Positions 465-62,441 of a stretch of DNA of 64,000 bases are shown here, piece by piece (position 1 is the stretch's first letter; each line of letters starts with the position of its first letter). Under the pieces are notes generated by a model. It was not told the DNA's origin. It searched no databases and worked only from the letters and a program-made list of their open reading frames with translations. The stretch is from Intoshia linei (Eukaryota; Animalia; Orthonectida), in the NCBI GenBank assembly GCA_001642005.1, contig LWCA01000016.1:1-64000 (forward strand). The letters are read 5' to 3'. The translations under genes were made by a program, and so were the position numbers.

Positions 465-3400
465 ATGTTTGATTACTCAACAAAACCAAATTTTTCAGAA
501 ATTAATTTTGATGCATTCTTGATAACATTTTCTCAAGTAATAATTTTTTTGTGTTTGATAATTTGATAATTTGATAATTTTAGATTTTCTTTTTTGCTAT
601 TGCAAAATTATTTTTTAATAAATATTTATTTCGTAACTTTGAGGTAAATTTAATTTATTGTTTACAATATTATTTTAGATTAGAAATAAAATTGTTCCGT
701 CTATATTTTGCGTAACATTTTCTGTTTCTTGTGTTATGTTTGAATTGATCATTTTTGAAATTGTCGATATTTTCCATAGAAAGTTTTTTTTAAAGTTTTA
801 AGTATTTATTTTTATTTTTTAGTTCTCGTTTGTTTTACTCGAAAATGCAATTAAATATGATGCTATTTGTTCTAATTTTTGTGTTACCATTCTATTTGGC
901 ATTTTACATTGTTGGGTGTTTGCAATATAGTATTTTTTATTATTTTGACAGTAATATAAATGTACATTGTACAATGAAACTCGTCTACAATGGCCATTGT
1001 TATAGTGAAAAATTACTTGAAAATTAAAAATTAGTGAATTAAAATTAAAATTATTATATTAGTACAATTGTATACTATTGTACAATATTTTTTAAGTTTT
1101 CTACCAAATTTATAACTAAAAATAATAAAAATTTAATATAAATCAATAAACTATTCTATATGTCGGGTCGGCAATTTTTTGCATCTCGTGGGCCACTTTT
1201 TTTTATCAAAAAATTCCCCACCCCGTTTTTAAAAATTTTCACATAATATATTTCATTTTTAATTAAATTAATTGATACAGTTCTAGTATATTTAACAAAA
1301 TTAAATCCAGGACGATTTGAAAATTCAGTATTAAAATGATTATAATGAGCTAATTTTAGTAGAAAATGTTTAAAATGGTGTTTAAAAAATGAAAAATTTA
1401 AAAATAAATAAATTACATATTTACTCAAAGAGACACCAAAATTATTTTGTTGGCCACTGGTTGTCGACCTCTGCTATATGTGTATCATTTATTTTTAGTT
1501 GAAAAAAACAATTTTCGCCGATTTTTATATAGCATTTTATTATGGCTTAAATTTATATATTTTTTTTGGAAAATTGGAACTGCCTTCCCTATTGAAAAGC
1601 CTAAACAAAGTAAATATTTCATAATTACGTTATTGATTTGATTAACTTTTAATCAATTATTTTTGTAATTTTAATATCATTATTAGCATAGCCGAACCTA
1701 CCAATCTCGAAGTCGCCCGAAAACGAAAAATGACTTAAAAAACTATTCATATACGATGCGTAGTGTCATATAAACCTAGCCACATCTCCAAGGTTCTTGA
1801 TTTGGCATTTTAAATTTAACATACAAAATACAGTGTGGTTATGATATTCAAGAATTAAATTTTTTCAATGCTCAATTTGAAAATATGTGTCCGAAATTTT
1901 ACAAAAATTTCGTCGAGGCCCCGAAGGGTCTCGATATGGTAGGTTTGGCACTGATTATTATTATTATTATTATGGCTGCAAATTTTTTACCAAAAGATCT
2001 TTCCTTGGTGGGCCTTCAATTATAATTTATTTAATTTAAAAATATATGAAAATTATTCTGTATTTCCTAATTTTAAACAATATTTAAACTTTTTATAATA
2101 TACTAGATTCTAGTAACTAGAATAAATTCTATAACGGCGTTCATTTTCTAGACTCTATAAAATTTATATGTTAACCCCTAGATGTGTAATTTATCCTGTC
2201 GACCACTAAGGGGTCCACAGGGACCCGTCGAGAACCACTAATCTAAAGTGACATTCATTTGAGCAATGTATTGTAGCGATACATCATAGAGCCACATAAT
2301 CATCGATTTTACGTATATATCATATTGATTTTTTCAAGAAATTTTTGTGGGTTTTGTTAGAGAAAATTTTTTAAACCGATTTTTAAAGAATTTAAAGATA
2401 ATTTTGTTCAAATAAGTTATAATTATTTTTAAAATCTTTAAAAATTGGGTGATAAAAATCAATTATATGATTAATTAGCAAAATCTATGATTACGTCGCT
2501 CTAACAATACATCGTTTAACTGAATGTTCGCCCTTTAGAACAAAAAAATAGCTGAATAGCTGCGATTTATTTACTTTTTCAAAAAATTGGGTAATTTTGG
2601 ATTTTGACCATGAAAATGCAAATTTATGAGATTGAAATTTATCTTATTTTCTGCACAAGAGAAAACTGATTTGAAATTTCTGGGATTGTCAGTTTTCTAA
2701 ATAAACCTTTAAACAGACACATTTTTAGCAACTTACTATATTATTATTACAAGTAAGGAGTTTTGTAATTTAATTATGTTTATTTTTAGTTTTTTCTGCA
2801 GTAGATCACTGTGTTAGCCGTATAGGTGTTATTGGAGTTACAGTAATGTCAATATTATCCGGATTCGGTGCAGTCAATTATCCTTACACTTGTTTAAACT
2901 ATTTCATGAGGTTATATTCATTATACATTATTTTTTATACATTACAATGCTTTATATTATGGGTTCTCACACTTTTTTGAAGGCGGACCGGTAATAAATT
3001 ACAAAATTTATCGCGGACCACTAAAACGATATTACAAGGGAACATTAAAAAAATTTTGATAAAAACGTAATAAATTGACTTTTAATTAATAAATCAATGT
3101 TTTTGAAAATTATTGCGCGGATCGGGATTTGGGAAACGTTGTATTATACGTTATTGTATTTATTTATTAGTTTGATTATTTTTGGGGTTAAATAGTTAAT
3201 TTTGATTTTACTCAACAGGATTCCATAAACAGAATTGTGTAATCACTGTCCGTTAGTTTTGAACTACACCACGCCATATAAAAAAATGTAATTTGAATTA
3301 AAAATTTAAATTTTAGAACTGTAGATCACAATTACATTAAAAACCTTGAACATAGAATACTACAGTCTGTCGATATAATTATAGAAAAACAAATTGAGTG

Positions 3401-6400
3401 ATATTTTTTTACAATTAATTAAAAAAATGAAAATTATATTTTCAGTTTAGTAAAATTAAAACAAGAGAAAAAGAGAAGAAAAAGAAATGTTACAAAAGTT
3501 GGTTTATTCCAAAGCGCGTTTATTTTGTTTAAGAATGTTTTTATTGGTCGAGTGAGTGGTATGTATTTTTTATATAATTTTAAAAATGTAATTTGCATTT
3601 TGGTATTTTATAATTTTAGATACTGATAAAATGAAAAAATCTATTGCTAATTTAAAAGAAATTAATAGGCAATTATTTTTAGAATTAGTCGATGTTCACA
3701 ATGATAGAGTATGTTTTTATTTTCAAATTTTTAAAGTATCTTATTCTTATATGTTATATTAGGATCGCGTTCAATTTTCAAAAACTCTTAAAGGCAAATA
3801 TTTCAATTTTTTGGGATTCTTTTTTTCTATATATTGTGTGCTGAAAATTGTGATGGTATTTTATAATATATTTTAAAAGGTAGATGTTATAAAACCGTAT
3901 AAACAGGGATAGCCATCAAGGCGATCGCTATCGACTGATCCATGGCCAAATCATTATATGAAACATATTGTTAAATTGTAGTTAAATTGTTTTAACTACA
4001 TGTCAGAAAAATATATGAATGAAATAATAAAAGTGGTAGGTTAGTTTGATGTAAGATTTTTTGATTTTAAAAGGATGGAACAAATTGAATCGATAATTGT
4101 ATTTCTTTGAAAATTTCAGAGGTACGTTTGGATGAGGGTGAAACCAAATTGAAAATTTTGTCATTGAAAGCTAAAATTTATCTTTATCGTATATTTATAC
4201 TTATCTCGTAATTCAGAGGATGATATTTTAAATTTTGTTGGTTAAGAAATATACGTAAATTTACGAAGTTGTAGCGAATAAATTAATTAATAATTAATAT
4301 TTTGGTTCAACTTATGCGAATTGGCTTTTTCTTTCATGATTATAATAAAATCAAAGAAAATATCATTGTTGACTGACTCACATGTGGTAAACTCATTGAA
4401 ACTATCACTAACAAATTACACACACAATTTAAAAAAATAGCCGATGAAATTAAATTAAATGGCGGAATCTTACTAATTATTAAAATTGTAAACTATTATT
4501 TTGCTAATTAAAATATATTCATATATTTTTTATCACAAAGTAGAGGCGTAAGTGAGAATCCGAAATTGACCACTTTTGCTTCAAGATTATTAACATTAAC
4601 ATATCATATTTAAATAAAATTAGTTGGCTGGATTAGAAAAATCTCATAGTCAATCGCATTAAAAACTAGTTGGCACCCCTCGTATAAAAGATAAAATTGT
4701 ATTTTAGCAATTTTCGAATTGTTGATTAACTTTTTTGAAAGCTAAAATTTTTAAATGAGAATTAATATATACATTTTAATATTGATGCAGTTTTATTGAA
4801 TTTGTAATTTTAAAATTTAATCATAGTTTAGTAACTAAATATATTTTTATTATTTTAGGCCATCATCAACATATTGTTGGATAGAGTTGGTAAAGTTGAT
4901 CCAATTACTCGTGGGATCGAAATTTCTGTTAATTATTTAGGATTTAATTTTGATGTTATTTATTCAATTGAAAATTTTACAGTTTATTCACTTTAGGTAC
5001 GATTTTGGGCCCAACAACTGTCGTTTTGGTTGATTGGAATTATCATTATAACTTCAATTCGCGGATTCTTGTTAACGTTGACAAAAGTAATTTTAATCTA
5101 CATTTGATTTCATTTATTTAGTTTTTTTATGCGATTGCCAGCTCTAGGAGTTCCAATATTATTATTTTATGTATTGCACAAACTATGGTACGTTTTTAAT
5201 TATTAATAATAAAAATTTTTTTCCTATATAAAATAAATGTCTGTTACCGTTTATTTAAAAAATTAAGAGTGGTACAATTACAAAAATCCAAACTCTGTTA
5301 CAATTTTTGAAGGGTAATGCAAATTTCATAAATTTATTCAAGAAATGGAACTGTTTAGGTTAATAAGCCCCAATTTTAAAAAATGAAAAAAACTAAGAAT
5401 CCCTGAATTTTGTAAAATGTTATAGCTAGGCAAAGTTTTTTTAACCTATTAAATAGATCAAAATAAAATTTTAACTTTTTTTACCTATAAAAAATTAAGT
5501 CAAAATTCAATTGGGTCCCAGATAATAAAATAAGTAAAAAGATTAATTATGATATATTACATAGTTTTTAATATCATTGAATAAAAAATTTATTTGTTAC
5601 AGTTGTTAGTTAGTACTTTCTTCAGTATGCTAAAACTTGTTTCTATACAGCAATAACTAAAAACAGATTATAATACATTAACCCTATAATCACTTTTCAA
5701 TTTGTATTTCCTAATTCAAGTGGTATCATTCAAATGTAAAGGTTTTTGTCAACAGAAAATTTATGACTGAACCTAAAGTAATTTTAATTAATAATTTTAA
5801 ACACGTTTTCGTCTTAAAACGTCGTTTACGTCAGGGTACACTGTAGAGTTCTGCATCGGATTGTGTTGAAGTGAGATGTACGAACGAAACGGAAAATGTT
5901 TGTCCGAAACACGATTAAAATTTAATTAAATTAAGTTAAATTTTACTTAGTTATAAACTTAAAACACGAAATATTTAAATTTTGTAAACACGATCTGAAC
6001 ACGACTAAAAAATTTCATAATAAGCACTTTAGGGGATGTATTTTGTGTCAATGGTTTTGTTGATAAGAATGAATATGCCTTATAAATACCGGTAATTTTA
6101 TATTTATAGATAATTTTTATATTTTATTTACATTTTGTTAATTGATTGAAAGTTTTCAAAATTAGTTAACTTGATACGTTTTTCGTAATAATTTTTTTGT
6201 TTAAATTTAAAAAATTGTAAGCTTCACTTAGTACATTTTTATAAATTTAATGTTACTTTTTGCAAAATTTTACAGAATGAATTTGTAGATCAGGAATTCT
6301 CAATCTGACAGATTGTGCACATTTGGGCGGTGTATTTTCAGAACAAAATTATTTTATAATTGATATTATAATTTCCTTGTACATTACATACGTATTAAAT

Positions 6401-7040
6401 TCATGAAATGAAACTACACTTTGTATTAACTATTAAAGCCAAGCGATTAAAATGTCTATTTTAAGAAAAAAGGAAAACAAAAAAAATTTTTATTAGAAAG
6501 TTCGATGCGCAGTTATTACTGCAAAGTCAAATAAAAATGTTATTATTAGAAAAGTCACCTTACAATTGCTAGACAAGCAAAAAATTGTAAATTCCAAAAA
6601 TTTTGTTAAATAGGTGATTTACATCATTTTTATAATGCTAAAAATTAATTTAAATAATTTTTGCTTAATTTTCATTATTATAGAGTTCATAATTAATGTT
6701 TTTAGGAGAGGGAGATAATCTTGCAAAATCTTTTTAATCTTTAATTATTATAAATAAAAATTTTATAATTATTAAAATTTTTTAATCTGGGGGGATGGTC
6801 CTTAAAAGGTTTTATTTTATCCACTGGTAATGTGACGCACGTTTTGTCAACATGTATTTATTTTATATATTAATCATTTAATCTAGAGGTATAATAACAT
6901 CAGTATTGGGAGACCTGGAATTTAGGTTTTATCACAGATGGTTTGATGTAATTTTTTTGATTTCTGCTTTAAGCAGTATTTTATTCCTGTACATTGCCGC
7001 ACATCGACGTAAACTTAACAATTTGAAAATTAAACTGTAA
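465..7040 (+). CDS. GPR89: Golgi pH regulator (GPR89/GPHR), multi-exon
   Basis: Spliced translation: [24 protein letters not shown]|[20 protein letters not shown]|[28 protein letters not shown]...[24 protein letters not shown]...[28 protein letters not shown]. These are GPR89 motifs. Introns are GT-AG; stop TAA at 7038-7040. Confidence 0.95.
1161..1471 (-). mobile_element. hAT-type MITE, inverted relative of the 8411-8693 and ~37349-37614 copies
   Basis: Degenerate TIRs (gggtcggcaa ... ttgtcgacctctg). The internal gcatctcgtgggccac and ggccactggttg segments match the reverse complement of the 8411 element. Confidence 0.55.
1687..1953. mobile_element. MITE with ~25-bp TIRs and an 8-bp TSD (hAT-like)
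   Basis: TIRs CATAGCCGAACCTACCAATCTCGA ... TCGATATGGTAGGTTTGGCACTG; flanks ATTATTAG / ATTATTAT. A related copy lies at ~37999-38156. Confidence 0.7.
2961..3141 (+). mobile_element. hAT (Buster-like) MITE family A, copy 1
   Basis: Shares ggcggaccggtaataaatt...aaattttatcgcg and the terminal ttgggaaacg(t/c)tg with 11779-11965 and the inverted 38316-38507 copy. Confidence 0.75.
3904..4680 (+). mobile_element. Internally deleted hAT element with a transposase C-terminal remnant
   Basis: Ends CAGGGATAGCCA ... TTGGCACCCCT, flanked by the 8-bp direct repeat CGTATAAA. A frameshifted FGSTY-(C)[13 protein letters not shown] dimerisation-domain remnant lies at ~4300-4355. Confidence 0.7.
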
Positions 7041-7066
7041 AAATTTTAATAAATATTGAAACAATT

Positions 7067-9854
7067 TTAATCTATCCAATTTACATGTACGGTGTCTGTA
7101 CGATATCTAAAACATTGAATAAACATTTACATTGTATGTAAAGGTTACCTTTGAGTTGTATTGGTTTCATTCCAGCTGGTAGGTCCATTTTTATCATACA
7201 TTAATTGTCCGGCCCTAAAAAATTAAAAACTACCTTAAATTATAAACCTAGCAATCATTGCACCATTGTCTATGCAAAAACTTTCATCTGTTGCATATAA
7301 AATACCGCCAGAATCTTTAATCATATTTTGCATCATTTCCTGTAATCTTAAATTGCCTATAGTTTATTAATTTAACAAACGTAATATCATACATCCAACT
7401 CCACCGACAATTAAAATTTCGTTCAATTTTATATCAACCATAGCTCTTTCTAAAGGTAAAAATTTGTAAATATAAAAAATTGAAAATCAAACCTACTACC
7501 TCAATAATCATTGAAAAGGCAGTTTCTTGTAGAGAAAAACATATGTCGGCAATAGTATACTCGTCAGACCAATTTTCTTTAGATATTATCGTCTAATTCA
7601 AAACATTACATAATAAACCCAATTAAATTGCTAACAGTGATCAGATTTTTGGAATATTTTCATAAAAAAATTCTACCAAAAACGTCATTGTAATGTAAAT
7701 TAAAATTAATTACTTGTATGGTAGAAATTATTCCGGAAAAACTGAAATTCATGCCTCTAACAACATATGGTAAATCTACTAGTTTTTTTCCTTTTTTTGC
7801 TTCTTGTTCAATGTTGTAACCTGGACATGGATCATTGGAAAGTTTGAGCAGTCTAGCTGCTTTATCAAAAATATTTCCAACACCCGAATCCATAGTCTCT
7901 CCGATAATAGCATATCTATTGTTTCGATAATATATAACCTAATCAAATATTAATACATATGCTCAATTTTCCCTTTATAAATTATACTGTAACAACGTTA
8001 ACATCTCAGCATTCATTACAATTTAAATTTTAAATCAAATCAAGTAAAAATATTACTTGAGTATTTCCTCCGCTAGCATATAAAATCATGGGTTTATTAC
8101 ATTTTGTGACTAATCGGCCCATTTCAATATCTAATTTACAAATTTAAGTGTAAAAAAAATTCATTTACGTCCGATGCAATGATTTACTGCAACAATTGGT
8201 TTTTTCCAAAGCCGGGAAATCAATCTAGCTACAAAGGCTACATCGGTTAAACAGCTAGCTATTCCTGGCCCTAAACATATACATTTATAGCGCTATGAAA
8301 AACTTCAAAGATTTGGGTTTACTACGAAAGAACTACATTTGAAAGTATTCATAGTACCAGCACTAAATGACCATCTCAGGTTATAATTATCAATATAATA
8401 ACCTAAAAATCAGGGATCGGCAACCAATGGCCTAAAAAATAATTTTGGTGGCCCTTTGAGTAAATATGTAAATTATTTATTTTTAAATTTTTCCGTTTTA
8501 AACATTTTCTACTATAATTGGCTATTATAATCATTTTATTACTGAATTTTCAGATCGTCCCGAATATTATTTTGTTGAATATACTAGAAACGTTTCTCTT
8601 CAGTTCAAATTGTAATGTATCATGGGTAAATTATGAAAAAATGGGGCCCATATTATAAAGTGACCCACGAGATGCAAAAGGTTACCGTCCCTGCTCAAGA
8701 TGAATATGAAAAAATTAGTTAAGGATTGTAGTTTTTCATCTCCAATTTAATGTTTCAAAAAAATAAAATTGAATTTTTAAGTAGAAATTTATTGTTCAAT
8801 ATCGTAGTGATTCTCTACTAGAAAATAAGTTATATGACTATTATAACGATATCACATCCAATGAGTCATGAATCATTAAAAAAATCCGGTTTTACCAAGC
8901 CTTTAGGAAAAAATCCAGTTTCATCAACCCTTTAGGGAAAATTCTAGTTTTACCAACCTTTAAGGAAAATTCCACTTGTACCAACTATTACATGCGATTC
9001 TAAAACACAATCTCTTTTCATTTTGGGTATTGAATTAAATTGCTTTATGCAAACATGAAATTCCATTTAGTTTACAAAATTATAATTTTTAAGACAAGTT
9101 TTTTGCATTAGATAAAATGTTATATACATTTGGATATAAATCAATCATATCATACCAAAAGGTACTTAGTGGTTTTTCATAGAAAATATTCGTGCAGTGG
9201 AATCATTTATTAAATCTATTATTTCATCCTGTACTTTATCGGGAATAGTTTATATATTGAGTGAAGAAGAACATTTAAAATTGTAATAGAGAATGTAAAA
9301 ATATTTCCGTAACAGTATCATGTTAATATTATAAATAAAAAAATAAATAAATGTATAATAAAATTTTTAAATTCTCACGAGACCCCCTGACAAATTTCGC
9401 GACACCGTGTTGAAAACCACTGGTTTAGACTGTGTTCATATGCAAAATAATATGTTTGTTTTCTGAAAAAATAACGGCCTATAATATTTTAATACGACTA
9501 GGGGTAGAGATAATTTTTTTGGGGGAACTAATGGACGAATTAATTGTAGCTTTCTATCCCTGATTTTATAAGTAAATTGGACCTTTGGTAAAACAGATAA
9601 TATCTATATCATCATAAACCATATTTGCTTCTTGAAAGGCCCGTTTAATTAATTTAATAATATTTTTTCTGTGATGGACAGCAACATAACGCGGAACAAA
9701 TCCTAAAATGAAACTCATCGATGAAATAAATTGTGATACCGTCGCCATCTGTAGCAATAAATGTTTTACGAATATTTATCAACACTTTATCGCCTCTCAT
9801 TATTCCTATCCCCAATTTGTTTGCACTTCCTTCAATACCCAATGCACATGTCAT
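7067..9854 (-). CDS. OSGEP: tRNA N6-adenosine threonylcarbamoyltransferase OSGEP/Kae1 (KEOPS catalytic subunit)
   Basis: [18 protein letters not shown]...TKG|PG...VNHCIGHIEMGR...YASGGNTQ...[27 protein letters not shown]...[14 protein letters not shown]...CIDNGAMIA...[14 protein letters not shown]. The Kae1 motifs run across ~33-45 nt introns. Confidence 0.97.
8411..8693 (+). mobile_element. hAT-type MITE in an OSGEP intron
   Basis: TIRs CAGGGATCGGCAACC ... GGTTACCGTCCCTG. The internal gccctttgagtaaatatgtaaattatttattttt is shared with ~37405-37440. Confidence 0.7.
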
Positions 9855-9916
9855 AGTTTAAGATTTAAGATTTAAAATTTAACAATAAAGATATTTTCAT
9901 TTAGAAAAAGTAAAAA
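9855..9916. promoter_or_regulatory. Putative bidirectional promoter between OSGEP and TP53RK
   Basis: 62 bp separate the divergent ATGs (9854 and 9917). The spacer contains repeated (A/G)ATTTAA units. Confidence 0.7.
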
Positions 9917-10759
9917 ATGGAATCTAACCAATGTTTTTTGCAAGGTTCAGAATCTAAATTATATTTAGAATGGTACAACGGTCAATTGGTAATAAGAAAG
10001 TGGAGATATCCTAGATCTTACCGACATGCGACTATTGACGCTAGATTACGTAAACGTCGAACAAAAGCGGAGAAAAAAGCTCTTGAAAAATGCTACTCAT
10101 TAGGTATACTTGCAATTCAATAATTTGCACTGTTAAGGTTTAATTTTTAATTATGCTTAGGAGTTTCTGCTCCATCCTTAGTGGATGATAATATCGACAA
10201 AACTACTCTATATATTGGATACTTACACAATACAATTCAATTGGGTGATTATATCAACAAAATGTCCAAAGATGAAGAATTGGATCAGGAACATGTTATA
10301 AAAAAGTTAAATTGGGCTTTTTCAGAATTTGGTCGATTAGTAGCAAATTTACACTCCCATGACCTGATTCACGGAGATTTAACCTCATCGAATGTACTCG
10401 TAGAATTGGAAAAAAATCACAAATATCTTAAAAAAATTACTTTACCCACCAAATGTGACCATGCAATAGAAAAACAAGTTCCTTTGAGTAGTAATAATAT
10501 CGATTCTTTTAAAGGGGAAAAATTGCACCTTGTAGACTTTGGACTTTCATCAATTTCTCTTAGTGCTGAAAGCAAAGCAGTTGATTTGCATTTATTGGAA
10601 AGAACAATTCAATGTAGATATGACGATCAAAAATACCCAAATTTGTTCAATTTTTTTATGGATTCTTATTACAAACATGTCAATTGTGAATTTCTATACA
10701 AACAAATCTCGCAAAAACTTGACTCTGTACGCAAAAGATATCGAAAAATTGGATGTTGA
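9917..10759 (+). CDS. TP53RK: TP53-regulating kinase PRPK/Bud32 (KEOPS subunit), 2 exons (9917-10103, 10161-10759)
   Basis: QGSES, KWRYPRSYRHATID (Bud32 KxRxxKxYRHxxLD), RTKAE, IHGDLTSSNVL, LVDFGLS, ESKAVDLHLLE and a basic C-tail. One 57-nt GT-AG intron. Confidence 0.95.
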
Positions 10760-10782
10760 TTATAATTTTAATAAAATTTTGA

Positions 10783-11232
10783 TTAAAAGGGATTTGGTTC
10801 ATAAATACAATTATAAGTGTTTTTGTAGCATTCTTCACAGCAATAACAATTGTAACACTCTGGACACGATTCATGACATTCTTGGATACAGTTATATTCC
10901 AATGTTAAATTACAACAACAATTATTTGTTTCGATTTCTGAAGGAGAATTTGTGTTTAGTTTTTTCCATAAATCTTCATACATTTCCATTTTTATGTCAT
11001 TTTCCCAATTTTTTGGTGAATAGTTTGATGATTTATAATGATTTGAAGATCGCAATAAAAAAACCATTGATTCTTCAATGGTTGTTCCACCAGGTTCCTA
11101 TAATTTTATTATAATGTGTAAAAATTATATATAAAATACAAGATCTATGCTAGTCCAAAGTTTTTTTGATTTTTTGAGCATTTTTCGTTTAGACGATTTA
11201 GGCTTAATGTGACCGGCTAAAACTTGACCCAT
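10783..11232 (-). CDS. Orphan 135-aa protein with an N-terminal MG, a polybasic patch and a Cys-rich C-terminus; 2 exons (11140-11232, 10783-11097)
   Basis: ATG at 11232 gives MGQVLAGHIKPKSSKRKMLKKSKKLWTSIDL. A 42-nt GT-AG intron (11098-11139) joins it in frame to EPGGTTIEES-MVFLLR...NNCCCNLTLEYNCIQECHESCPECYNCYCCEECYKNTYNCIYEPNPF*. Confidence 0.7.
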
Positions 11233-11778
11233 TGGTTATTTGTTCAGATGTCAAGTGTGGTATATACTATTCGATAAGTATGTAGTGTTATTTTATAAAC
11301 TACAAAATGATCATTTTTTTAAATGGTTTTGACCCAAATTGATTTTATTTTAATTATTGATTTATTCAAAGTCATGATTGATAAATAACACTCTCGACGT
11401 TATCATATTAATGTGTTAACCTTGGATTTTTATTCACATTAGTATTTATGCGGATAGTCTTTATTTAAAATTCATCATTAACATTGATTTTTCATGTTCT
11501 CAATTTTAAACATAAATTTACATTAGTGAGTGGGAGTATAAGACTAAACACAATTGTCAACTGGTTAATATTTTATTTTTTGAATGGATTTTTTATTAGA
11601 AATTAAAAAAATATTTCCGAGTTTATGGGTTTCATTTCGTCAACTATTAAAAAATGGTTTACGCTAGTCCTAACATACATGTATATAAAACTTTTAAATT
11701 TTTTTTAAAAAAGGCATCAATTTGTGAGATTGACATTTTTAGTGTATGTTAACTGGAAATAACCGTATAAGGCTAATA

Positions 11779-11965
11779 CAGGGGTTCCCACATCTTTTTC
11801 ACGGCGGACCGGTAATAAATTATAAAATTTATCGCGCACAATGAAAGCGAAATTACTAAACAACATTACAAAAGGTTTGATGTAAAATGTAATAAATTGA
11901 CTTTTAATTAGTAAAAATTATTTCGCGGAGCAGAAAAACATTGGAACGGCATTTGGGAAACGCTG
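11779..11965 (+). mobile_element. hAT (Buster-like) MITE family A, copy 2
   Basis: TIRs CAGGGGTTCCCA ... TGGGAAACGCTG; left flank GGCTAATA fits nnnTAnnn. Confidence 0.8.
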
Positions 11966-11971
11966 GCTTAT

Positions 11972-12559
11972 CAGAGCCGTTTTAAGGTATGGTTAATATG
12001 GGCTGTAGCTCAGGGACACTCATTAAAAAAGCCCCAAATTAATAAAAGATATTTACATTTATATCTTAAAAAGAGGCTCCAATTTATTAAAAAATACTTC
12101 ACATTTAAATTATTTGATTGGGAAAAAACAAGCAATAACATTTTATATATGTATAAAGATATACAAATGATAAATTGGAATCATTATTTCCTAATATTGA
12201 AATCATATTTGATAATATCATATCTGATTTCTCTCAGAAAAAAGTAAGAAAATAACATTTGTGAAGAATTGTCAAAAATTTTTTTGACTGCATGGTGCTT
12301 TATTTTCAAATGAAAAAGTAAACTTTGTTCATTAATTAAGTAAGTTTTTGTAAAAGAAATAAAAGTTACTAGAAATCTACATAATATCTTTTAATGCTTT
12401 TATTAACACTCAATGAAATAAGACGCTAAGTCTCCAACCAACAGTATGCCTGTCTTCTAAAAAGGGGCCCTAATTTTTTTTTATCGCTTCGCTCAAAACT
12501 TTAAAGGGCCTGGGCCCTTCGCTTAGCCCAGAGTCACGAAGTGGCTTAAAACGGCTTTG
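11972..12559. mobile_element. hAT-type MITE with a perfect 8-bp TSD
   Basis: TIRs CAGAGCCGTTTTAAG ... CTTAAAACGGCTTTG; TSD TGGCTTAT at 11964-11971 and 12560-12567. Confidence 0.85.
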
Positions 12560-14382: not shown

Positions 14383-15687
14383 GTGAAAATCAAGACAGAG
14401 ATGAAATCAACATGTTCAAATAATGTACGCGATAGTATAAAATTGAATCAAATCGGTAATGTTGATGTTGAAATGCAGGATTTTAATTGTAATGTCAAAA
14501 TTGATAAAAGTATGAACGGTGACATTGCAAATCATAGTTTGAATAATGATATTGTCATGCAATCACCAAAAGTAGAAAAAATAGCAAAAGTTATAGAATA
14601 TAACAAACACGATGTCCCGAAAATTTCAAGTCGATACGTAAAAATGTCTAATAAAATGTTTTGTGTGGCGGTAGCTTTTGATAAGGAATTGAATTTTGAT
14701 AATATTGAACGTGATGCAGCACCTCTACCATAGCCCAATTTTAAAATTATTGCCGGGTCATCACAGCGAGGCAAAGATAAGCTGATCGATTCGAACGACT
14801 ATAGTTTCAATATAAAGGTTGTACGTGGAGCAACAACCTACTGGCAATGCATTAGTAGGTCGAAAACGGTTAACTGTCGGGCAACAGTTATACAAAAACA
14901 TGGCAATTTTAAAAGAGAAAGTCAACCACATATACACCTAGCACTGCCAAGATAAAAAAATGTACATATTGTAAAAAAAACAATAAAAGAGCGGGCAAAA
15001 TAAAACATTTTTCAATCGGCAGCAGAAATTGCTAGGCAGGTTGTCGTAAACCATATAAATGAAGCACCAGCTTCTTCACTGCCAAGCATTGAAAATCTTG
15101 CCCGACAGGCTAATAGACTGCGCAGCAAAAATATGCTTGTGGAACTAACAGATTCATATTTTGAACTAAATCTGGATCACGTGCCAAACAATTTTTTAAA
15201 AAAAGATTTTATGGTCGAGGAGAACAGGCATATAATTTTTGCAACTGACCAAATGTTGCAATTAATGACCAATGCAAAAACCTGGTACATGGATGGCATT
15301 TTTAAAATTGTTAAAAAGCCCTTTTCGCAACTATTTAACATACACGTATTTATTAAAGAACGGGATCACACGAAGCAAGTTCCTGTGCTTTTTGTTTTAA
15401 TGACATCAAGGTCAAAAAAAGATTACAAAAAACTGTTCAAAAAAATAAAAGGACTTTTGACTGGTGATGTCAAATTGAAAAAGGGCGTGATGGATTTTGA
15501 AGCAGCAGTTTGGAAAGAATTTCCAGACATATTTCCAGGAGTGAAATTGCAAGGCTGTTTGTTTCACTGGACACAATGCGTGTGGAGGCACATTCAAGCA
15601 ATAGGGCTGCAGGCATCCTATATCCAGGATAATGGAACCTTCAAGTTTTACAGGAGGTTGATGGCTTTGCATTTTCTTACCTCATGA
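14383..15687 (+). pseudogene. Degraded Mutator-like (FLYWCH + MULE) transposase
   Basis: One reading frame interrupted by 3 stops (14731, 14953, 15001). It carries a FLYWCH finger (SQRGKDKLIDSNDYSF...TYWQC...CRATV...PHIH) and a MULE DDE core (WYMDGIFKIVKKPFSQLFNIH, VPVLFVLM, VMDFEAA, GCLFHWTQCVWR), and is truncated at the C-terminus. Confidence 0.88.
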
Positions 15688-16023: not shown

Positions 16024-17898
16024 TTATTGATGATATAAATGAGGGAAATCTTTACATATTTGTACAAATGCATTGCATATTTTGTTAAATTGAACAATAT
16101 TTAAGGAGGTAATGTTCATTGTTGGGTCAATGTCAACTTTAAGCATTAACAAGTCAGCTAAATCAACATTTTCTTGTGGAAACATTTTTCTAAATTAAAT
16201 TAATTTAAATTTACATTTTTTAGCATAAACTATACAAAAAGGGTTATCTATCAATAATTTATCTACAATTTATCAAGCGCCCTCATCACAAATGTATTTT
16301 AATTAAATTAAATTTTTATTTCTGAATACATATAAAATTCTATAATTTTTAAAGTAATAAAACAATAAAAATTATAAATTATTAAAAATAATTTAATAGA
16401 GTCGCGAATCGTAACTCGACAATTAACAACCGGTCATACAAATCATTTTCAAAATAGGGTTCAATGCAATTCGATTTAAATATGTTTTGATGATCTATTA
16501 CTTTACCACAAATTCACCAAAATCATTAATTCAGTAAATAAAATAATTACCTAATATTAAATAGAATATGTTTGGATTTATGGTTAAATAGATGAGTGAT
16601 AATTTTGTTAATCAAAGGAAAAGGATGATTAATTAGTGGTTTCTTTCTTGGAATAAAATGTACAGTTCCAGCATCAACTTTTGGTCTAGGAACAAAAACA
16701 CTGTTTGGTATATCATAAACTGATTTACAATTACAATATATTTGACAAATAAAGGACAATCTTGAACGAATAAGTGAATTTGGTTGGCAAACGATTCTAT
16801 CGCAAATTTCTTTCTGAAATGTCAATGTCATTGGAACTCTATGATATTTCCATGCACTTTGCCTTTCAGATATTTGTTTCATCCATTTTACCACAATTGC
16901 CGTCGAAACATTAAATGGTAAATTTCCAATTATTCCAAATTTTGGAATTTCATCAACATCCCATTTTGGCTCATTTTTCGATTCAAATGTGTCTTCAAAT
17001 GAGCATTGCATTACATCGTCAAATACAACATGTATAGGAATATTGGTAGATTCACAAAGAATCTAAAATTAAATACACTAAAAAATATTGACGACCCGTT
17101 TAAGAATTAATAGACATTGATATCACATCAGTAATGTGTAAAAAAAACAAAAAATTACTCTTAGTAATTGGGAAAATCTGGTATCCTTTTCAATTATCAC
17201 TATTTTCTCTGGGTTTAACTTTACAAGCGATCTAGTTATCCCGCCAGGTCCAGGACCTATTCTATATTTTAAATGTAAAATATAAATACCCAAAAATTTC
17301 AAATACTACCACAAATTTCACAATACTGTTCTAAACACGCCAAAACACAATATAGTAGCAGTACGAAAAATTTCAAATGAACGAACATGCATATTTTTGT
17401 AAAAACCTGAAAACATTTGTTAATGTAAATTTGTATATTAATACGTATACTTTGTAATATGGAAAAATAAAACTATCAATTTTAAAGTCAGTTTTTACCC
17501 CAGCCTGGAAACGGTGCAATACAGTAATAAATATTACAAGAATCGTAACCCGAGTCAGTTTAAATTTATACGTGTCCAGTGCACTGTTTTCTAGAAATTT
17601 GAAGCACAATTGAAAAAAGTTGAAAAACATAAAAATAACAAAATGTACTCGATAACAGTTGACCCAAATTTCAATCCAGACGATTTCACCAACTTATCAC
17701 ATATATTTTCATCCAAAATAAAATTTTGTCCAAGATTTTTTCTGGCTGATCTATACAAAATAATATCAATGAAACAAACACGTACACTTTATAAATTCTA
17801 ATCATATCGCTGATAGTAGGCATAGGCGGTAATCTTCTAAATCTTGGGCTCAGACTGGCTTCAATTATGCCTTTTCCAACAGTTTTCATTAACGACAT
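16024..17898 (-). CDS. TFB1M: Mitochondrial dimethyladenosine transferase 1 (TFB1M)
   Basis: RLPPMPTISDMIRIYKV|SARKNLGQNFILD...VIE|IGPGPGGITRSL...IEKDTRF...IIGNLPFNVST...MTLTFQKEI...RSRLS...FVPRPKVDAGTVHFIP. The last exon ends PHLYHQ* at 16024. Confidence 0.95.
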
Positions 17899-20320: not shown

Positions 20321-23300
20321 ATGATAAATCAGGATTATGACGAGAAGGGCTTTGATCATGTTCATAACGCCACAGTAAAAGGTTTCGTTAAATCTATTGA
20401 AAAGTTTATATTGACTGATGCTAATGAATTGGAAAAGGGTATTTCTTTGCATATTGTGGTTACGTTCAGAGTTAATGTTTAATTAGTTACACGGGATGGT
20501 CTTCAGTCTACTCCATTATTGTTGGCCGCACAATACGATCATTTGGATGTGTTTAAACTGCTGGTTACTTTAGGAGCTAACCTGAATCATGTCAATACAA
20601 AATCTTGCGGAATCATAGATATTTGCGTGGAGCATGAATCATTTAATGTCATTTTTTATATGATTAATGTTTGGAAAGCACAGAATGACAATTTAAATGA
20701 ATCTGTTGAAAAATCAAAATCGACGGAAAAGTATCAAAATATTTTTCAAAAGGTATTGCATTTTTGTTTATTCTATGTTAAATGCATCTTATTTTTTTAC
20801 CGGTTTTTTTAATTTTTAAAATAATAAGGTAATATTTTCATAGTACAACTCCCATAAAATTCATATTAAACGAATTCAAAAAGTCTGGGTAACCTCAAAA
20901 CTAACAAAATTTTATAAATTTTTTTAAAAATCCTTCCTTAAAAGCAGTGTTTCTCATGGTGGTGACTGGTCACCCTAAGGGTTGACCAATTTTATTAGAA
21001 GGTGAATACGACAATTTTAGATGATTGGAGTGGATGATACATTTTAAGCATATTTCATTTAATTTAGTAAAACCTTATGAGAAAAAACCAAAAATTTTAC
21101 CACCTCGTAAGGAAAATCCCTCTATCTGATCCCTAAAGAAAAAACATAATTTTACCAATTCCTAAGGATAAAACCGCTTTTACCAATATTTTTCTGAAAA
21201 ATCCCTCTATCTCAAGGTTTCTTAACCTTTTTTAAGTTTAGCACAACCGTTAGCCAGATCAATTATTTCCAGTACACCTGGAAAATAAAAAATGATACCT
21301 TAAAATTCAATTTAAAAATCGTATTTTATTGAGATTTTAAAAAATCCCCCTATTGAACATCATCAATAAATAAACATTAGGGTGATCACCATATTCAAAG
21401 ATCAAAAAGTATTTTTCACCATCAGGATTATTGGTGATGGTGATTGTAGTAAACTTTAGTTTACTATCTCCTTATTGATTCTATATTATTAACTTGTAAC
21501 GACTTATAATAAAATTAACTAAATTGTTTATACACATACATTTCTATTACAGTGATTACTTTCCTGAAAAAATTATTCAAATTGGTTGAGTTTGGACCCG
21601 GCCACTCAACATTGAAATTTTTCCCTATAAAGTTTAAATTAAACATTATTTTCATAGTTAGACACCATATGACATATGACATAGATATACAGTCGATTCT
21701 GTTCTATATGAACATGAAGAGACCAAGTTTTAATCATGTTCATACTATACTGTAATATGAGCATATATGAATGGCGATAATAATACAATTAAAAGTTTCG
21801 AAAAGTCCAATCAATGTTTGTTCAAACAAAATTGTCGTGTTCATATTAAGCTGAGTTCATATTCTAGGATGTTCATATAGAACATAATTGACTGTACACT
21901 TATTTGAGTCATAAAATAAATTTCAATTTGAAAATACGTTTAATTAGATTTTTTTATTAACATTTTTTATTCAAAATTTAAAAAATAATAATAGTTTTTC
22001 TAGCACCTCTAGGGGTGCTATTACTTCCGGTTAAGAAACCATGACTCTATCTGATTTCTAATAAAAAACTTAATTATATCAACCCTTAAGGAAAAAATCC
22101 GCTTTTACCAATATTTTTCTGAAAAATCCCATTTTACCAAACTTTTAGATCAATAATTCATCTATCTGATTTCTAATAGAAAAAACCTAATTTTACCAAC
22201 CCCTAGAGAAAAAATCCCTTTTTGCCATTATTTTTTTGTGAAAATTTCCTTTATCTGATTCCAAAAGAAAAAACCTAATTTTACCAACCCTTAATAAAAA
22301 AACCCGCTTTTACCAATATTTTTATGAAAAATCTCTTTTTACCATTATTTTTTTGAAAAATCCCTCTATCTGATCCCAAAAAAAAAACTTAATTATACCA
22401 ACCCTTAAGGAAAAATCCCATTTTACCAAACTTTTAGATCAATAATTCATCTATTTGATTTCTAATAGAAAAAACCTAATTTTACGAACTCCTAGAGAAA
22501 AAATCCCCTTTTGCCATTATTTTTTGTGAAAATTTTCTTCTATCTGATTCCAAAAGAAAAAACTTAATTTTACCAATCCTTAAAGAAAAAATCCAATCAT
22601 ACTAAACCTAAATCTCTCAAATTAACTCAAATCTTAAGTTAAAGTATAACATTATCCATCGAAGTTGCGGTATTTAAGTTGAAAGAGTCAACTTTATCAA
22701 CCTATTTATTTATTATTATTATTATTTACCTATTATAATAATACTAATAATTAAATGAAACTACATCAAGTTTAGTTGATAAATACACTGGAAAGTAGCA
22801 TACAACACCAATCAAAAATTGTAGCATCCTCAAGTAAAATAATATTAGAAATACTAAATAGACCAACAAATGAAGCATGTTACGACGAAATGATGTCATT
22901 AAATCTACTAGAAACGTTGATTCAGGTGTTAAACTCTGCCGAAAAATGTATGATTGAAAACATAAAAATTAACAATGAAGAAGTATTAAGCATGTACCCT
23001 TTAATTAACATTTTATTAAAACTATGCTACACGTTAATAACATATGCAAACAATATACAGCGAAAATGCTACAAACAAGAAAAATCTAATTTACCTGAAA
23101 TAAAAAAATTACAAAAACTAAAAAATGTAATAACAAATAAAGTGACAACTCAAATTTCTCAAAATAAGCCTATTCTATTGAAAAATGAAATTATTGGTGT
23201 AAATATCGATATCATGATTAGATTATACAAATCTGAATCATTTCAAGTCTTTGTTAATTTTTTGAATGTAACTAAACAAATGGTCGCTACTAGTCGACTT

Positions 23301-42100: not shown

Positions 42101-42698
42101 AAATTCTTTGTAATTTTAATAATAAAAAAAAAATGTAATGATCCTAATCTCTAAAATTAAAATTAGAAACAATTAATTATAATTTTTTTGTAACCATCGA
42201 TTTTCAAATTTAATTTAAATTTAAATTTACTATATTTGTATTTTTATATTATTTTAATCAAACTTTTTCAAAATAAATAAAATTACAAACAATTTGCTAT
42301 TTCTTAATTGTAAAATGTACATGTACATAATTAAATTAATATAATAATTACCAACAATTTCGGCTCTAACCCAACCGAATCTAAATTAGTGGAAAAAAAA
42401 TTTAAAATAAAATACGTATTTTGTCGACTTTGGCGAGTTGAAATCTAAAACATAATATAACTGTAAGAAAACTAAATGTAATACATGTAAATGTAATCAC
42501 AACGTAAATAAAGAAAATTACTTGTAGAGCAATTATTCCTATAATTAAAGACATGATATCAGAAAGCATATGATATGCATCAGACACTAATGCTAACGAA
42601 TTTGTCTTTTGACCGACAACTAGTTCAGTCAAAAAAAAGGAAAATGTTAATATTAAAATAACTATCAATTTAATAGTATCCTTTTTAATTTTCAACAT
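39197..42698 (-). CDS. SLC30A1: Zinc transporter ZnT1/SLC30A1-like, paralog A
   Basis: ELVVGQKTNSLALVSDAYHMLSD; micro-exons giving NTFGWVRAEIVG; His loop HGHDHSHNH; LNMQGVALHIAGDTLGS; HEFHVWQL...FHDNGIHNTTVQPEF; Cys tail PCILKCQTGECEKYYCCQE*. Confidence 0.9.
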
Positions 42699-42923
42699 GT
42701 AAACATTCAAAAAAAAAAGCAAAATTATTTACTACTACAATTCATTATTGTAACAAGATAAAATAATTATAGTAAAATAGTAAGACAAGTAAAAATTGTT
42801 AACATTGTACAATTGTATATAATAAATAATAAAAATAGAATTTATTGTTGCATTTTATATAACTATATCACATTCAAATGTAATTAAATATATTATATAT
42901 TTCTGATGTTTGTCTACATTGTA

Positions 42924-61159: not shown

Positions 61160-62441
61160 TTATTCATAATTTGCAATAATTATCATTATAAATACTCCAA
61201 ATCCAATAGCCATTAAATGTAAACAAGAAGTAAAAATATTCGTACAACTTTTAATAATTTGCGGAAGTAGATTTACACACGATATGTAAATAAAACCTCC
61301 AGCAGTGATTGGCAAAGCATATTGGCTGGAATCTTTTACAAATTCTTCAACGTGTATTGCTAAAAATGTTCCAAATGGTCCACCGAGTGCTGTCAAAAAT
61401 TGAAGTAATATAGCCTAAATTTTTAATATAAATTATGACATTTTTTCGTTACATTTTAAATACAATCTAATACAAATTCGCCATTAATTTTTTAATTACC
61501 CGTAACAACCATTAGCGGCGGGGTAAATGTAAAAATTATTTTTTCATAATTTACAAAATATAAATATGAAAAAATGAATGAATGAATGAAATAAATTAAC
61601 AAATTGACTTTGATGGAACCTATTGTTTATCCATATTTCACAACCTCAATAAATGGGACTGATAAACGCAAACATTTCCGTAAAATAATGTATTTCAAGT
61701 AACCTTATGCTTAGAAATTCCCGATTGAACTAAAACAGAAAAATCGCCAACTTGATGTGGAAACTCGTGTAAAAGAATCATAAAACTTGACCCAAATCCA
61801 ACCTCCTTTGAAACATTAAATGAAGATCCAATAGCCAAACCATCGGTAAAATTGTGCAAAAAGTCTGCAATCAAATTAAGAATTGCTGCAGAAGAGATAG
61901 TACAACCGGCTGTAGCTAAAATAATTTTTTTTAAAAATTAATACTTTCAACGTCAATTACACAATTCCTTCTTTTTCAATTGTTTGAATCGTTTTCTATC
62001 TGAAGTGTCTTTTATTATTCTGACTATAATTTCTAAAACCATAAAAATTCCCATTCCAATTAGGACATATAGTCCTGTTTTCATTTCAAAATTATGGTTG
62101 TGAGTATGTTGTTGATGAGCATGGTCATGTACATGGTGAGAATGGTCATGTAAATGGTGAGAATGGTCATGTAAATGGTGAGAATGGTCATGATCATGAT
62201 GAGAATGTAAATTTTGGTTATCTTGACTCACGTGTGAGTGACCAGCAAGTGCATGTGGAATGATATGAAGGAATGCATCACCCAACATACCTCCAGCTGC
62301 AAATGTTATCATAAGTTTAAAAAATATATCGTTTCGTTTAGAAGTATCAAACCGAATCAAATATAGAAAGGTTGCAGGTATCATCGATACGGCTAGAGAT
62401 ACCATAATTATCATGAAATGGTCTTCGTCTTTTGCCAACAT
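61160..62441 (-). CDS. SLC39A7: LIV-1 family zinc transporter, ZIP7/SLC39A7 (Catsup/KE4)-like, 3 exons
   Basis: [18 protein letters not shown]; His-rich loop; [21 protein letters not shown]; [19 protein letters not shown]; [11 protein letters not shown]; [18 protein letters not shown]. Confidence 0.9.

What the first reader, a model, noticed from the sequence alone, without database searches (positions are those of the whole stretch)
7067..10759. KEOPS mini-cluster: Kae1 (OSGEP) and Bud32 (TP53RK) head-to-head with 62 bp between start codons
Seen: the OSGEP ATG (9854, minus) and the TP53RK ATG (9917, plus) are 62 bp apart, so both promoters and both 5' UTRs must fit in or overlap this spacer. 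Known: Kae1 and Bud32 bind each other directly in KEOPS/EKC (tRNA t6A synthesis). They are adjacent or fused in many archaea, whereas human OSGEP is paired head-to-head with APEX1 and is unlinked to TP53RK. Inference: this animal-type genome may have re-evolved physical linkage of the two core subunits under one bidirectional promoter, giving stoichiometric co-expression. That would be a eukaryotic analogue of the archaeal fusion.
Basis: partly seen in the sequence, partly recalled or inferred. Interest (0 to 1): 0.85.

Follow-up and report, generated by a model that had tools for sequence, protein, structure and literature searches.

The report
Kae1 and Bud32 genes head-to-head
In the tiny genome of the parasitic worm Intoshia linei, the genes for two directly binding subunits of the tRNA-modifying KEOPS complex sit back to back with 62 bases between their start codons; this is real and not seen in ten other sampled species, but nothing yet shows it is more than a by-product of genome shuffling and compaction.

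Summary
The window is contig C2463 of the 41.6 Mb genome of the orthonectid Intoshia linei.

- **Genes:** an intact 10-exon OSGEP/Kae1 gene lies on the minus strand (CDS 9854-7067, 335 codons). An intact 2-exon TP53RK/Bud32 gene lies on the plus strand (9917-10759, 261 codons). A 62-bp spacer of 13% GC separates them.
- **Expression:** spliced transcript contigs from three public runs confirm every intron and show both genes expressed. Kae1 contigs reach 9890-9898 and a Bud32 contig starts at 9896. The whole spacer is therefore transcribed and the two 5' ends abut without merging.
- **Second Bud32 form:** one Bud32 contig is spliced from the last exon of the upstream GPHR gene (donor after 7008) to an AG 13 nt before the Bud32 ATG. 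It skips the whole antisense Kae1 gene.
- **Synteny:** no Kae1 lies within 10 kb of TP53RK in two annelids, a nemertean, a brachiopod, a priapulid, a spider, a wasp, amphioxus or an unnamed AT-rich eukaryote. The linkage is derived.
- **Against selection:** the flanking convergent gaps to unrelated genes are even smaller (26 and 23 bp). One adjacent complex pair among about 9,000 genes is expected by chance once the whole genome is scanned.

Verdict: a real, lineage-specific divergent pair that probably shares a promoter region. Adaptive co-regulation is unproven.

The parts
7067..9854 (-). OSGEP/Kae1 gene, CDS of 10 exons (1008 nt, 335 codons plus stop). Introns skipped by RNA contigs, plus-strand coordinates, give or take the 1-2 nt shift the tool states: 7107-7148, 7214-7246, 7356-7391, 7450-7492, 7593-7713, 7937-8054, 8131-8168, 8270-9581, 9702-9738.
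   Evidence: Joints with CT..AC ends (GT..AG on minus) appear in all three runs. Exon-by-exon translations show [36 protein letters not shown] and the C-terminus [14 protein letters not shown]. Pfam TsaD matches. For the 7714-7935 exon, arch_KAE1 scores 75.6 bits and NF007174 84.3 bits against TsaD 39.5 bits.
9855..9916 (.). 62-bp spacer between the two start codons, 13% GC. It holds both 5' UTRs and is presumably a shared or overlapping promoter region.
   Evidence: Sequence. Kae1 contigs extend to 9898, 9892 and 9890 in runs X1, X2 and X3. A Bud32 contig starts at 9896 in X2. No contig merges the two genes.
9917..10759 (+). TP53RK/Bud32 gene, 2 exons (9917 to about 10099, and about 10157 to 10759; one 57-nt GT..AG intron), 261 codons plus stop.
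   Evidence: 100% and 97% match of P0001 to the two exons, single copy in the genome; intron joint in all three runs. TIGR03724 arch_bud32 136.5 bits against a cut-off of 125; invariant K28, H133-G134-D135, N140 and D188-F189-G190 are kept; 2094 homologues.
9903..9904 (+). AG splice acceptor 13 nt upstream of the Bud32 ATG, preceded by a pyrimidine-rich tract. It is used by a transcript coming from the GPHR gene.
   Evidence: In run X3, contig record 13 has 30 nt of 6979-7008 joined to the Bud32 5' region. The eight unaligned letters match 9905-9911/12, give or take one A. GT lies at 7009-7010 and AG at 9903-9904.
6887..7040 (+). Last exon of the left neighbour, a Golgi pH regulator gene (GPHR/GPR89) whose exons run from about 2795 to 7040. 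Its stop is at 7038-7040, 26 bp from the Kae1 stop. An internal alternative donor lies after 7008.
   Evidence: PF12430 ABA_GPCR C-terminus. GPHR_N at 2795-2920 and ABA_GPCR pieces at 3775-4026, 4973-5092 and 6894-6998; these were the only matches in the genome. RNA contig joins the exon ending about 6090/6091 to 6886/6887.
7041..7066 (.). 26-bp convergent gap between the GPHR stop and the Kae1 stop. It holds AATTTTAATAAA at 7042-7053.
   Evidence: RNA contigs run through it (X3 record 11 reaches 6979; X2 record 7 reaches 7064), so the 3' ends overlap.
10760..10782 (.). 23-bp convergent gap between the Bud32 stop and the stop of a minus-strand cysteine-rich ORF. It holds AATTTTAATAAA at 10764-10775.
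10783..11067 (-). Right neighbour: last coding stretch (94 codons) of a cysteine-rich gene with no Pfam match.
   Evidence: ORF. No Pfam family. Low-depth RNA contigs at 10792-10971 and 10880-11096.
8270..9581 (-). Unusually long Kae1 intron (1312 nt; published genome median 57 bp) holding two dispersed repeats of about 300 bp, at about 8407-8717 and 9121-9430.
   Evidence: joint; 43 scored matches elsewhere in the genome at 75-91% identity, 954 first-look candidates. PMC6543705 gives the median intron size.

Best explanation
This is a lineage-specific head-to-head pair of two intact, expressed housekeeping genes in Intoshia linei: OSGEP/Kae1 and TP53RK/Bud32, the catalytic subunit of KEOPS and its directly bound regulator.

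Both are transcribed outward from a 62-bp, 13% GC spacer. The mRNA 5' ends abut or overlap by a few bases inside it. Each core promoter must therefore lie on the other gene's 5' UTR or first codons, and the two share one very small promoter region.

The juxtaposition most likely arose by gene-order scrambling and intergenic shrinkage in this fast-evolving compact genome. Any co-expression is a consequence of that, not a demonstrated cause.

Shown: positions, orientation, gene integrity, identity of both genes, expression of both, 5' contig ends in the spacer, absence of the linkage in other animals, and equally tiny gaps to unrelated neighbours.

Inferred: shared regulatory elements, correlated expression, and neutral origin.
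For: - Sequence and gene models.
- RNA joints for all introns, and contigs ending at 9890-9898 (Kae1) and starting at 9896 (Bud32) without merging.
- Orthology. The second TsaD-family gene, on C1769, is the Qri7/TsaD type. Bud32 is single copy.
- No Kae1 within 10 kb of TP53RK in Owenia, Paralvinella, Lineus, Lingula, Priapulus, Parasteatoda, Microctonus, Branchiostoma or an unnamed AT-rich eukaryote. This rests on gene calls and on tblastn of each Kae1 exon with a positive control.
- Neighbouring gaps of 26 and 23 bp to GPHR and a cysteine-rich gene.
- Unchecked first-stage notes on the same genome list other very tight pairs of unrelated genes.
Against: - A specific pair being adjacent has a prior of only about 2e-4, and it is the very pair that archaea fuse or place in an operon. 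Selection therefore cannot be dismissed.
- Large parts of the window are not gene-dense, so compaction is not uniform.
- Contigs are unstranded and cannot fix true transcription start sites.
- One Bud32 form comes from an upstream promoter.
- The closest relative, Intoshia variabili, could not be examined.
Confidence: 0.6

Rival explanations
1. Selected co-regulation module. Linkage of the two binding partners under one bidirectional promoter is maintained by selection to balance their dosage, as a eukaryotic counterpart of the archaeal kae1-bud32 operon or fusion.
For: - It is the same gene pair that archaea fuse or co-transcribe (PMC10989989).
- The linkage is derived in this lineage.
- Both 5' ends lie in one 62-bp spacer and both genes are expressed in all three runs.
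- The a priori chance of this pair being adjacent is low.
Against: - No conservation data exist within Orthonectida.
- The Kae1:Bud32 contig-depth ratio varies from about 1.1 to 2.8 (weak measure).
- The other t6A genes are unlinked: Sua5 on C1487, a Pcc1 candidate on C2456, and no Cgi121 found.
- Equally tight spacing to unrelated neighbours.
- The pair was selected after the fact from a genome-wide scan.
Confidence: 0.2
2. Not a shared promoter. Bud32 is mainly supplied by transcription that starts at the GPHR promoter more than 7 kb upstream, reads through the antisense Kae1 gene and is spliced to the AG at 9903-9904 (or the acceptor serves another upstream exon). Only Kae1 would then start in the spacer.
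For: - In run X3 the Bud32 contig begins with 30 nt of GPHR's last exon joined at a canonical GT..AG.
- A strong acceptor sits 13 nt before the ATG.
- GPHR is on the same strand and ends 26 bp before Kae1.
Against: - In run X2 the Bud32 contig runs unspliced through the acceptor back to 9896.
- Intronic and antisense coverage across Kae1 is low; the 9304-9497 bin has depth 9, 0 and 0.
- In the spliced form the GPHR frame continues to a stop that overlaps the Bud32 start (derived from the sequence). Bud32 would then be a poorly placed downstream ORF.
Confidence: 0.15
3. Assembly artefact: the two genes are joined by a mis-assembly of the draft genome.
For: The assembly is a draft of 3520 contigs. 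No RNA contig bridges the spacer by 31 nt or more.
Against: - Independent RNA contigs cover 9739-9898 and 9896-10099 with zero mismatches.
- The spliced 7008|9905 contig ties the GPHR/Kae1 3' region to Bud32 on one molecule.
- The NCBI annotation places Bud32 on an 86.9-kb contig.
Confidence: 0.02

Closest known systems
Archaeal kae1-bud32 fusion (M. jannaschii MJ1130, Haloferax volcanii) and the kae1-bud32 operon of Saccharolobus islandicus
   Same: The same two orthologous genes, whose products bind each other directly in KEOPS, are physically linked (PMC10989989). NCBIfam NF007174, the model of the bifunctional fusion protein, matches both Intoshia genes.
   Different: In archaea the genes are co-oriented and either co-transcribed (with a 40-bp overlap) or fused into one polypeptide. 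Here they are divergent, spliced, separately transcribed eukaryotic genes. The linkage could only act through a shared promoter region, not through one mRNA or one protein.
Mammalian OSGEP/APEX1 bidirectional promoter
   Same: OSGEP is one arm of a head-to-head pair with a short shared promoter (PMC3418287 citing Ikeda et al. 2002).
   Different: The partner in mammals is a DNA-repair gene, not a KEOPS subunit. The Intoshia spacer is 62 bp of 13% GC. No CCAAT-box scan was run here.
Bidirectional gene pairs of compact eukaryotic genomes in general
   Same: Divergent genes with start codons tens of bases apart and overlapping 5' ends. In this same cluster the convergent gaps are 26 and 23 bp.
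   Different: The two partners happen to be subunits of one complex. Most such pairs are functionally unrelated.
TP53RK head-to-head with a GST-like gene (Lingula, Branchiostoma)
   Same: TP53RK is one arm of a divergent pair with a few hundred bases between the genes (341 bp in Lingula, 615 bp in Branchiostoma).
   Different: The partner is a GST-domain gene, seemingly the older arrangement. In Intoshia that place is taken by OSGEP.

Membership tests
Kae1/OSGEP (TsaD/Kae1/Qri7 family, Kae1 branch; PF00814, TIGR03722) | Sequence match to the family domain along the whole protein | tested here: met
   Seven of the ten exons, searched one by one, match consecutive parts of the model from position 2 to 290 of 323. 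PF00814 matches over the cut-off.
Kae1/OSGEP (TsaD/Kae1/Qri7 family, Kae1 branch; PF00814, TIGR03722) | Kae1 type rather than bacterial/mitochondrial TsaD/Qri7 type | tested here: met
   The largest exon scores arch_KAE1 75.6 bits and NF007174 84.3 bits against TsaD 39.5 bits. The second gene, on C1769, shows the reverse: TsaD 59.2 bits against Kae1 35.8 bits.
Kae1/OSGEP (TsaD/Kae1/Qri7 family, Kae1 branch; PF00814, TIGR03722) | Metal-binding His-x-x-x-His and the conserved ASKHA motifs | tested here: met
   NHCIG at the end of exon 3 with IEMG opening exon 4 (the second His is the codon split by the intron), SGGNTQ, VGGVG and DNGAMIA are read in the exon translations. They were judged by eye against motifs known from the literature, not by an alignment of the joined protein.
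Kae1/OSGEP (TsaD/Kae1/Qri7 family, Kae1 branch; PF00814, TIGR03722) | t6A synthase activity in a KEOPS complex | not testable with these tools
   Needs biochemistry or genetics.
Bud32/TP53RK (TIGR03724, atypical RIO-like kinase/ATPase) | Whole-protein score over the curated cut-off | tested here: met
   P0001 scores 136.5 bits against a cut-off of 125. It has 2094 homologues at E of 1e-3 or better.
Bud32/TP53RK (TIGR03724, atypical RIO-like kinase/ATPase) | Catalytic Lys, HGD loop, Asn and DFG retained | tested here: met
   K28, H133-G134-D135, N140 and D188-F189-G190 are invariant columns in a 30-sequence alignment that includes the Intoshia protein.
Bidirectional (divergent) promoter pair | Opposite-strand genes whose 5' ends lie under 1 kb apart with no gene between | tested here: met
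   62 bp separate the ATGs. Transcript contigs end at 9890-9898 and start at 9896.
Bidirectional (divergent) promoter pair | Shared cis elements that drive both genes, and correlated expression | not testable with these tools
   Only unstranded contigs of three runs were available. Contig depths are not a valid measure of expression.
Archaeal-type kae1-bud32 operon or fusion | Same strand, one transcript or one polypeptide | tested here: not met
   The genes lie on opposite strands, each is assembled as its own contig, and no contig merges them.
Conserved microsynteny block | The same neighbour pair in related species | tested here: not met
   No Kae1 within 10 kb of TP53RK in nine other eukaryotes, including two annelids, a nemertean and a brachiopod. 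Other orthonectids were not available.

The most novel reading that the evidence does not exclude
Orthonectids have independently rebuilt, in eukaryotic form, the archaeal linkage of Kae1 and Bud32. On this reading a selectively maintained divergent pair has two interleaved core promoters in a 62-bp spacer that couple the dosage of the KEOPS catalytic subunit and its ATPase regulator. A read-through and splice route from the upstream GPHR gene would add a second input to Bud32.
Probability: 0.15. Interest if true: 0.55.

Novelty: new member of a known kind. Interest (0 to 1): 0.3.

Why it matters
If the linkage proved to be conserved within Orthonectida and to give coupled expression, it would be a rare animal case of convergent clustering of two subunits that archaea fuse. 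It would also offer a natural test of dosage-balance ideas for KEOPS, whose subunits all cause Galloway-Mowat syndrome when mutated.

As it stands, it mainly illustrates how far intergenic space can shrink in this parasite. Two divergent mRNAs start within a few bases of each other. Convergent genes end 23-26 bp apart. A splice from one gene jumps a whole antisense gene to reach the next. That is useful for annotating the genome and for studies of promoter architecture in compact animal genomes.

Tried and rejected
- **Look-ups that found nothing.** The look-up of encoding contigs had no record for P0001, the window's own Bud32. It also had none for the Ischnura protein (P0015) or the Mizuhopecten protein (P0288).
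- **No close orthonectid relative.** The best non-self Bud32 hit is 38% identical and the highest identity among non-self hits is 42%. The named top hits are simply other AT-rich taxa: Undinarchaeales, Bonamia and Marteilia. Conservation in Intoshia variabili is therefore untested.
- **Other KEOPS genes.** Cgi121/TPRKB (PF08617) gave no match in the genome. Pcc1/LAGE3 gave only a sub-threshold candidate at C2456:11139-11270 (19.7 bits). GON7 was not searched. These blanks do not show absence, because small intron-split genes are easily missed.
I could not locate it, so that note stays an unchecked lead.
- **Literature.** The Intoshia linei genome paper is not held in the library. No held paper mentions a eukaryotic Kae1-Bud32 linkage.
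- **Steps not taken.** The spliced (joined) Kae1 protein was never assembled, searched or folded.
- **My first reading of the left neighbour was wrong.** I took it for a 66-codon small membrane protein. It is the last two exons of GPHR.
Full report
**Origin of the window.** The window is G000:C2463:1-64000 of a 41.6 Mb assembly in 3520 contigs, with about 26% GC. The large Bud32 exon is 99% identical to the NCBI protein 'hypothetical protein A3Q56_00324 [Intoshia linei]' (P0001, 261 aa). The genome is therefore that of the orthonectid Intoshia linei, a very simplified spiralian parasite with a compact genome. Its published median intron length is 57 bp (PMC6543705).

- On the minus strand an ATG at 9854 opens a gene whose exons match the Kae1/TsaD family.
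- On the plus strand an ATG at 9917 opens Bud32.
- The spacer 9855-9916 is 62 bp with 13% GC.
- The finding's outer coordinates are the two stop codons, 7067 for Kae1 and 10759 for Bud32.

**RNA evidence for the gene models.** The look-up of sequencing runs gave three small runs of one 2024 study. Their kind is not on record, but their contigs skip introns, so they are transcript assemblies. Laid on 6200-12000, they give nine Kae1 introns with CT..AC ends on the plus strand, which is GT..AG on the minus strand. The skipped stretches are 7107-7148, 7214-7246, 7356-7391, 7450-7492, 7593-7713, 7937-8054, 8131-8168, 8270-9581 and 9702-9738. There is one Bud32 intron of 57 nt, about 10100-10156. 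Boundaries are as the tool gives them, with its stated shift of 1-4 nt to reach the canonical dinucleotides.

The exons sum to 1008 nt for Kae1 (335 codons, the length I recall for human OSGEP) and 786 nt for Bud32 (261 codons, equal to P0001). Each exon was searched alone by reference.

**Identity of the two genes.**
- Seven Kae1 exons hit consecutive parts of TIGR03722 (arch_KAE1) and of NF007174, the model of the archaeal bifunctional Kae1-Bud32 protein. These hits score well above the bacterial TsaD model: for the largest exon, 75.6 and 84.3 bits against 39.5 bits.
- The exon translations carry [36 protein letters not shown] and the C-terminus [14 protein letters not shown].
- The only other clear TsaD-family gene, on C1769, is the Qri7/OSGEPL1 type. 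It has LGIETSCDDTG and scores TsaD 59.2 bits against Kae1 35.8 bits.
- Bud32 is single copy and passes the TIGR03724 cut-off, 136.5 bits against 125.
- Bud32 keeps the invariant Lys28, HGD 133-135, Asn140 and DFG 188-190 in an alignment with 29 homologues.
- Both genes therefore look functional.

**Other t6A genes.** They are elsewhere in the genome. Sua5/YRDC is on C1487. A sub-threshold Pcc1 candidate is on C2456. No Cgi121 match was found, which does not prove absence.

**Transcript ends in the spacer.**
- The Kae1 contigs run through the ATG into the spacer as far as 9898 (X1), 9892 (X2) and 9890 (X3). The latter two were computed from record lengths. The 5' UTR is therefore at least 36-44 nt.
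- A Bud32 contig in X2 starts at 9896, at least 21 nt before its ATG.
- The whole spacer is thus covered by transcript contigs, and the two sets meet at 9896-9898.
- No run merges the two genes into one contig. For an unstranded assembler working on 31-letter words (an inference on my part), this suggests an overlap shorter than about 30 nt.
- If these ends are near the true starts, each core promoter lies on the other gene's 5' UTR or first codons. This would be an interleaved, very small bidirectional promoter region.
- Contigs cannot prove starts or strand, so this step is inferred.
- Contig word depths are 147, 86 and 123 for Kae1 and 135, 40 and 44 for Bud32. They show that both genes are expressed at the same order of magnitude. 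The ratio is not constant, and the tool warns against ranking by such depths.

**A second Bud32 form.** In run X3 the Bud32 contig (record 13) begins with 30 nt that lie on 6979-7008. Eight letters follow that match 9905-9911/12, give or take one A, and then the Bud32 sequence. The genome has GT at 7009-7010 and AG at 9903-9904 after a pyrimidine-rich tract. This is a canonical intron of about 2.9 kb on the plus strand, and it contains the whole antisense Kae1 gene.

The donor exon is the last exon of the left neighbour, which is the Golgi pH regulator GPHR/GPR89. The evidence is PF12430 at the C-terminus, GPHR_N at 2795-2920, and ABA_GPCR pieces up to 6998, which were the only matches in the genome. 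In the spliced form the GPHR frame runs on for a few codons to a stop that overlaps the Bud32 ATG. I derived this by reading. The spliced form therefore looks like a read-through by-product rather than the main Bud32 mRNA. Its share could not be measured.

**The neighbourhood is equally tight.**
- GPHR stops at 7038-7040, 26 bp from the Kae1 stop.
- A minus-strand cysteine-rich ORF (10783-11067, no Pfam family) stops 23 bp after the Bud32 stop.
- Four genes are thus separated by 26, 62 and 23 bp, and the outer two have nothing to do with KEOPS.
- Both convergent gaps hold the 12-mer AATTTTAATAAA, at 7042-7053 and 10764-10775. The window has 3 copies against 1.4 expected.
- Other first-stage notes on this genome report many more tiny gaps between unrelated genes. 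They are unchecked, and my one attempt to verify one failed.
- Short spacing is therefore a property of the genome, not of this pair.

**The linkage is not ancestral.** I took TP53RK proteins of other species and read the DNA around them.
- Owenia fusiformis: an LSM gene lies just upstream on the same strand.
- Paralvinella palmiformis.
- Lineus longissimus.
- Lingula anatina: head-to-head with a GST-like gene 341 bp away.
- Priapulus caudatus: head-to-head with an ABC-F gene.
- Parasteatoda tepidariorum.
- Microctonus hyperodae.
- Branchiostoma lanceolatum: head-to-head with a GST-like gene 615 bp away.
- An unnamed AT-rich eukaryote.

None has a TsaD/Kae1 gene call within 10 kb. tblastn with each Intoshia Kae1 exon found nothing beyond noise, while the positive control scored 1e-13 to 1e-47. 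In three of these species no upstream gene at all lies within 10 kb, so for them only '10 kb' can be claimed. From general knowledge, human OSGEP (chromosome 14) and TP53RK (chromosome 20) are unlinked. Mammalian OSGEP shares a bidirectional promoter with APEX (PMC3418287). The Intoshia arrangement is therefore derived. Whether it is shared with Intoshia variabili could not be tested, because no close relative turned up in any search.

**How surprising it is.** With roughly 8,700 genes (from memory of the genome paper, which is not held), a named pair is adjacent with p of about 2/8,700, or 2e-4, and divergent with a quarter of that. Across the 15 pairs among six t6A genes the chance is about 3e-3. 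The pair was noticed in a scan of the whole genome for anything remarkable. With tens of thousands of known same-complex pairs (a rough figure of my own), several adjacent ones are expected by chance. The same pair being linked in archaea (fusion in H. volcanii and MJ1130; operon with 40-bp overlap in S. islandicus; PMC10989989) makes it an attractive coincidence, not evidence.

**Verdict.** The finding is a real, well-supported, lineage-specific head-to-head pair of the two core KEOPS genes, with a probable shared minimal promoter region. The claim that it evolved for stoichiometric co-expression is unproven and, on present evidence, less likely than neutral juxtaposition in a scrambled, compacted genome. 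It is a new instance of a known kind, a bidirectional pair of complex partners. Interest is moderate to low until conservation in other orthonectids or a genome-wide enrichment is shown.

Noticed in passing
window 6979-7010 and 9900-9916: A transcript contig joins GPHR's last exon (donor after 7008, ten codons before its stop) to an AG 13 nt before the Bud32 ATG. It skips about 2.9 kb that contains the whole antisense Kae1 gene. This looks like a read-through conjoined transcript, or a hint that such near-ATG acceptors serve upstream or trans-spliced exons in this genome.
   Followed up: partly
window 7042-7053 and 10764-10775: The 12-mer AATTTTAATAAA sits 2 and 5 nt after the stop codons of the two plus-strand genes, inside the 26-bp and 23-bp convergent gaps. 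The window has 3 copies against 1.4 expected. It is probably a poly(A) signal context that reads as ATTAAA on the other strand. This repeats an earlier first-stage note.
   Followed up: partly
window 8270-9581 (about 8407-8717 and 9121-9430): The one long Kae1 intron (1312 nt against a genome median of 57) holds two different dispersed repeats of about 300 bp. The genome has 43 scored matches elsewhere at 75-91% identity and 954 first-look candidates. Many variant transcript contigs lie on them.
   Followed up: partly
L021:6817-9660 (Lingula) and L022:1-9386 (Branchiostoma): In a brachiopod and in amphioxus, TP53RK is head-to-head with a GST-domain gene (314 and 354 aa; 341 and 615 bp away). 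The two share a weak tblastx link (E 7e-6). This may be an old bilaterian divergent pair that Intoshia has lost.
   Followed up: partly
window 2795-7040: The only GPHR/GPR89 (Golgi pH regulator) matches in the genome lie here on the plus strand, with introns of about 0.8-1.8 kb, far longer than the genome median.
   Followed up: partly
window 15133-15687; 16547-17011; 42402-42722; 61953-62489; 22776-24053; 24669-26261: Other coding pieces in the window: a MULE transposase domain (plus strand), an rRNA adenine dimethylase (minus), a cation-efflux (ZnT) exon (minus) and a ZIP zinc transporter exon (minus). Two long ORFs of 425 and 530 codons have no Pfam match.
   Followed up: no
G000:C1769:4400-6600; C1487:1261-1738; C2456:11139-11270: Other t6A pathway genes: a Qri7/OSGEPL1-type TsaD gene, Sua5/YRDC, and a sub-threshold Pcc1/LAGE3 candidate. 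All are on other contigs. No Cgi121/TPRKB match was found.
   Followed up: partly
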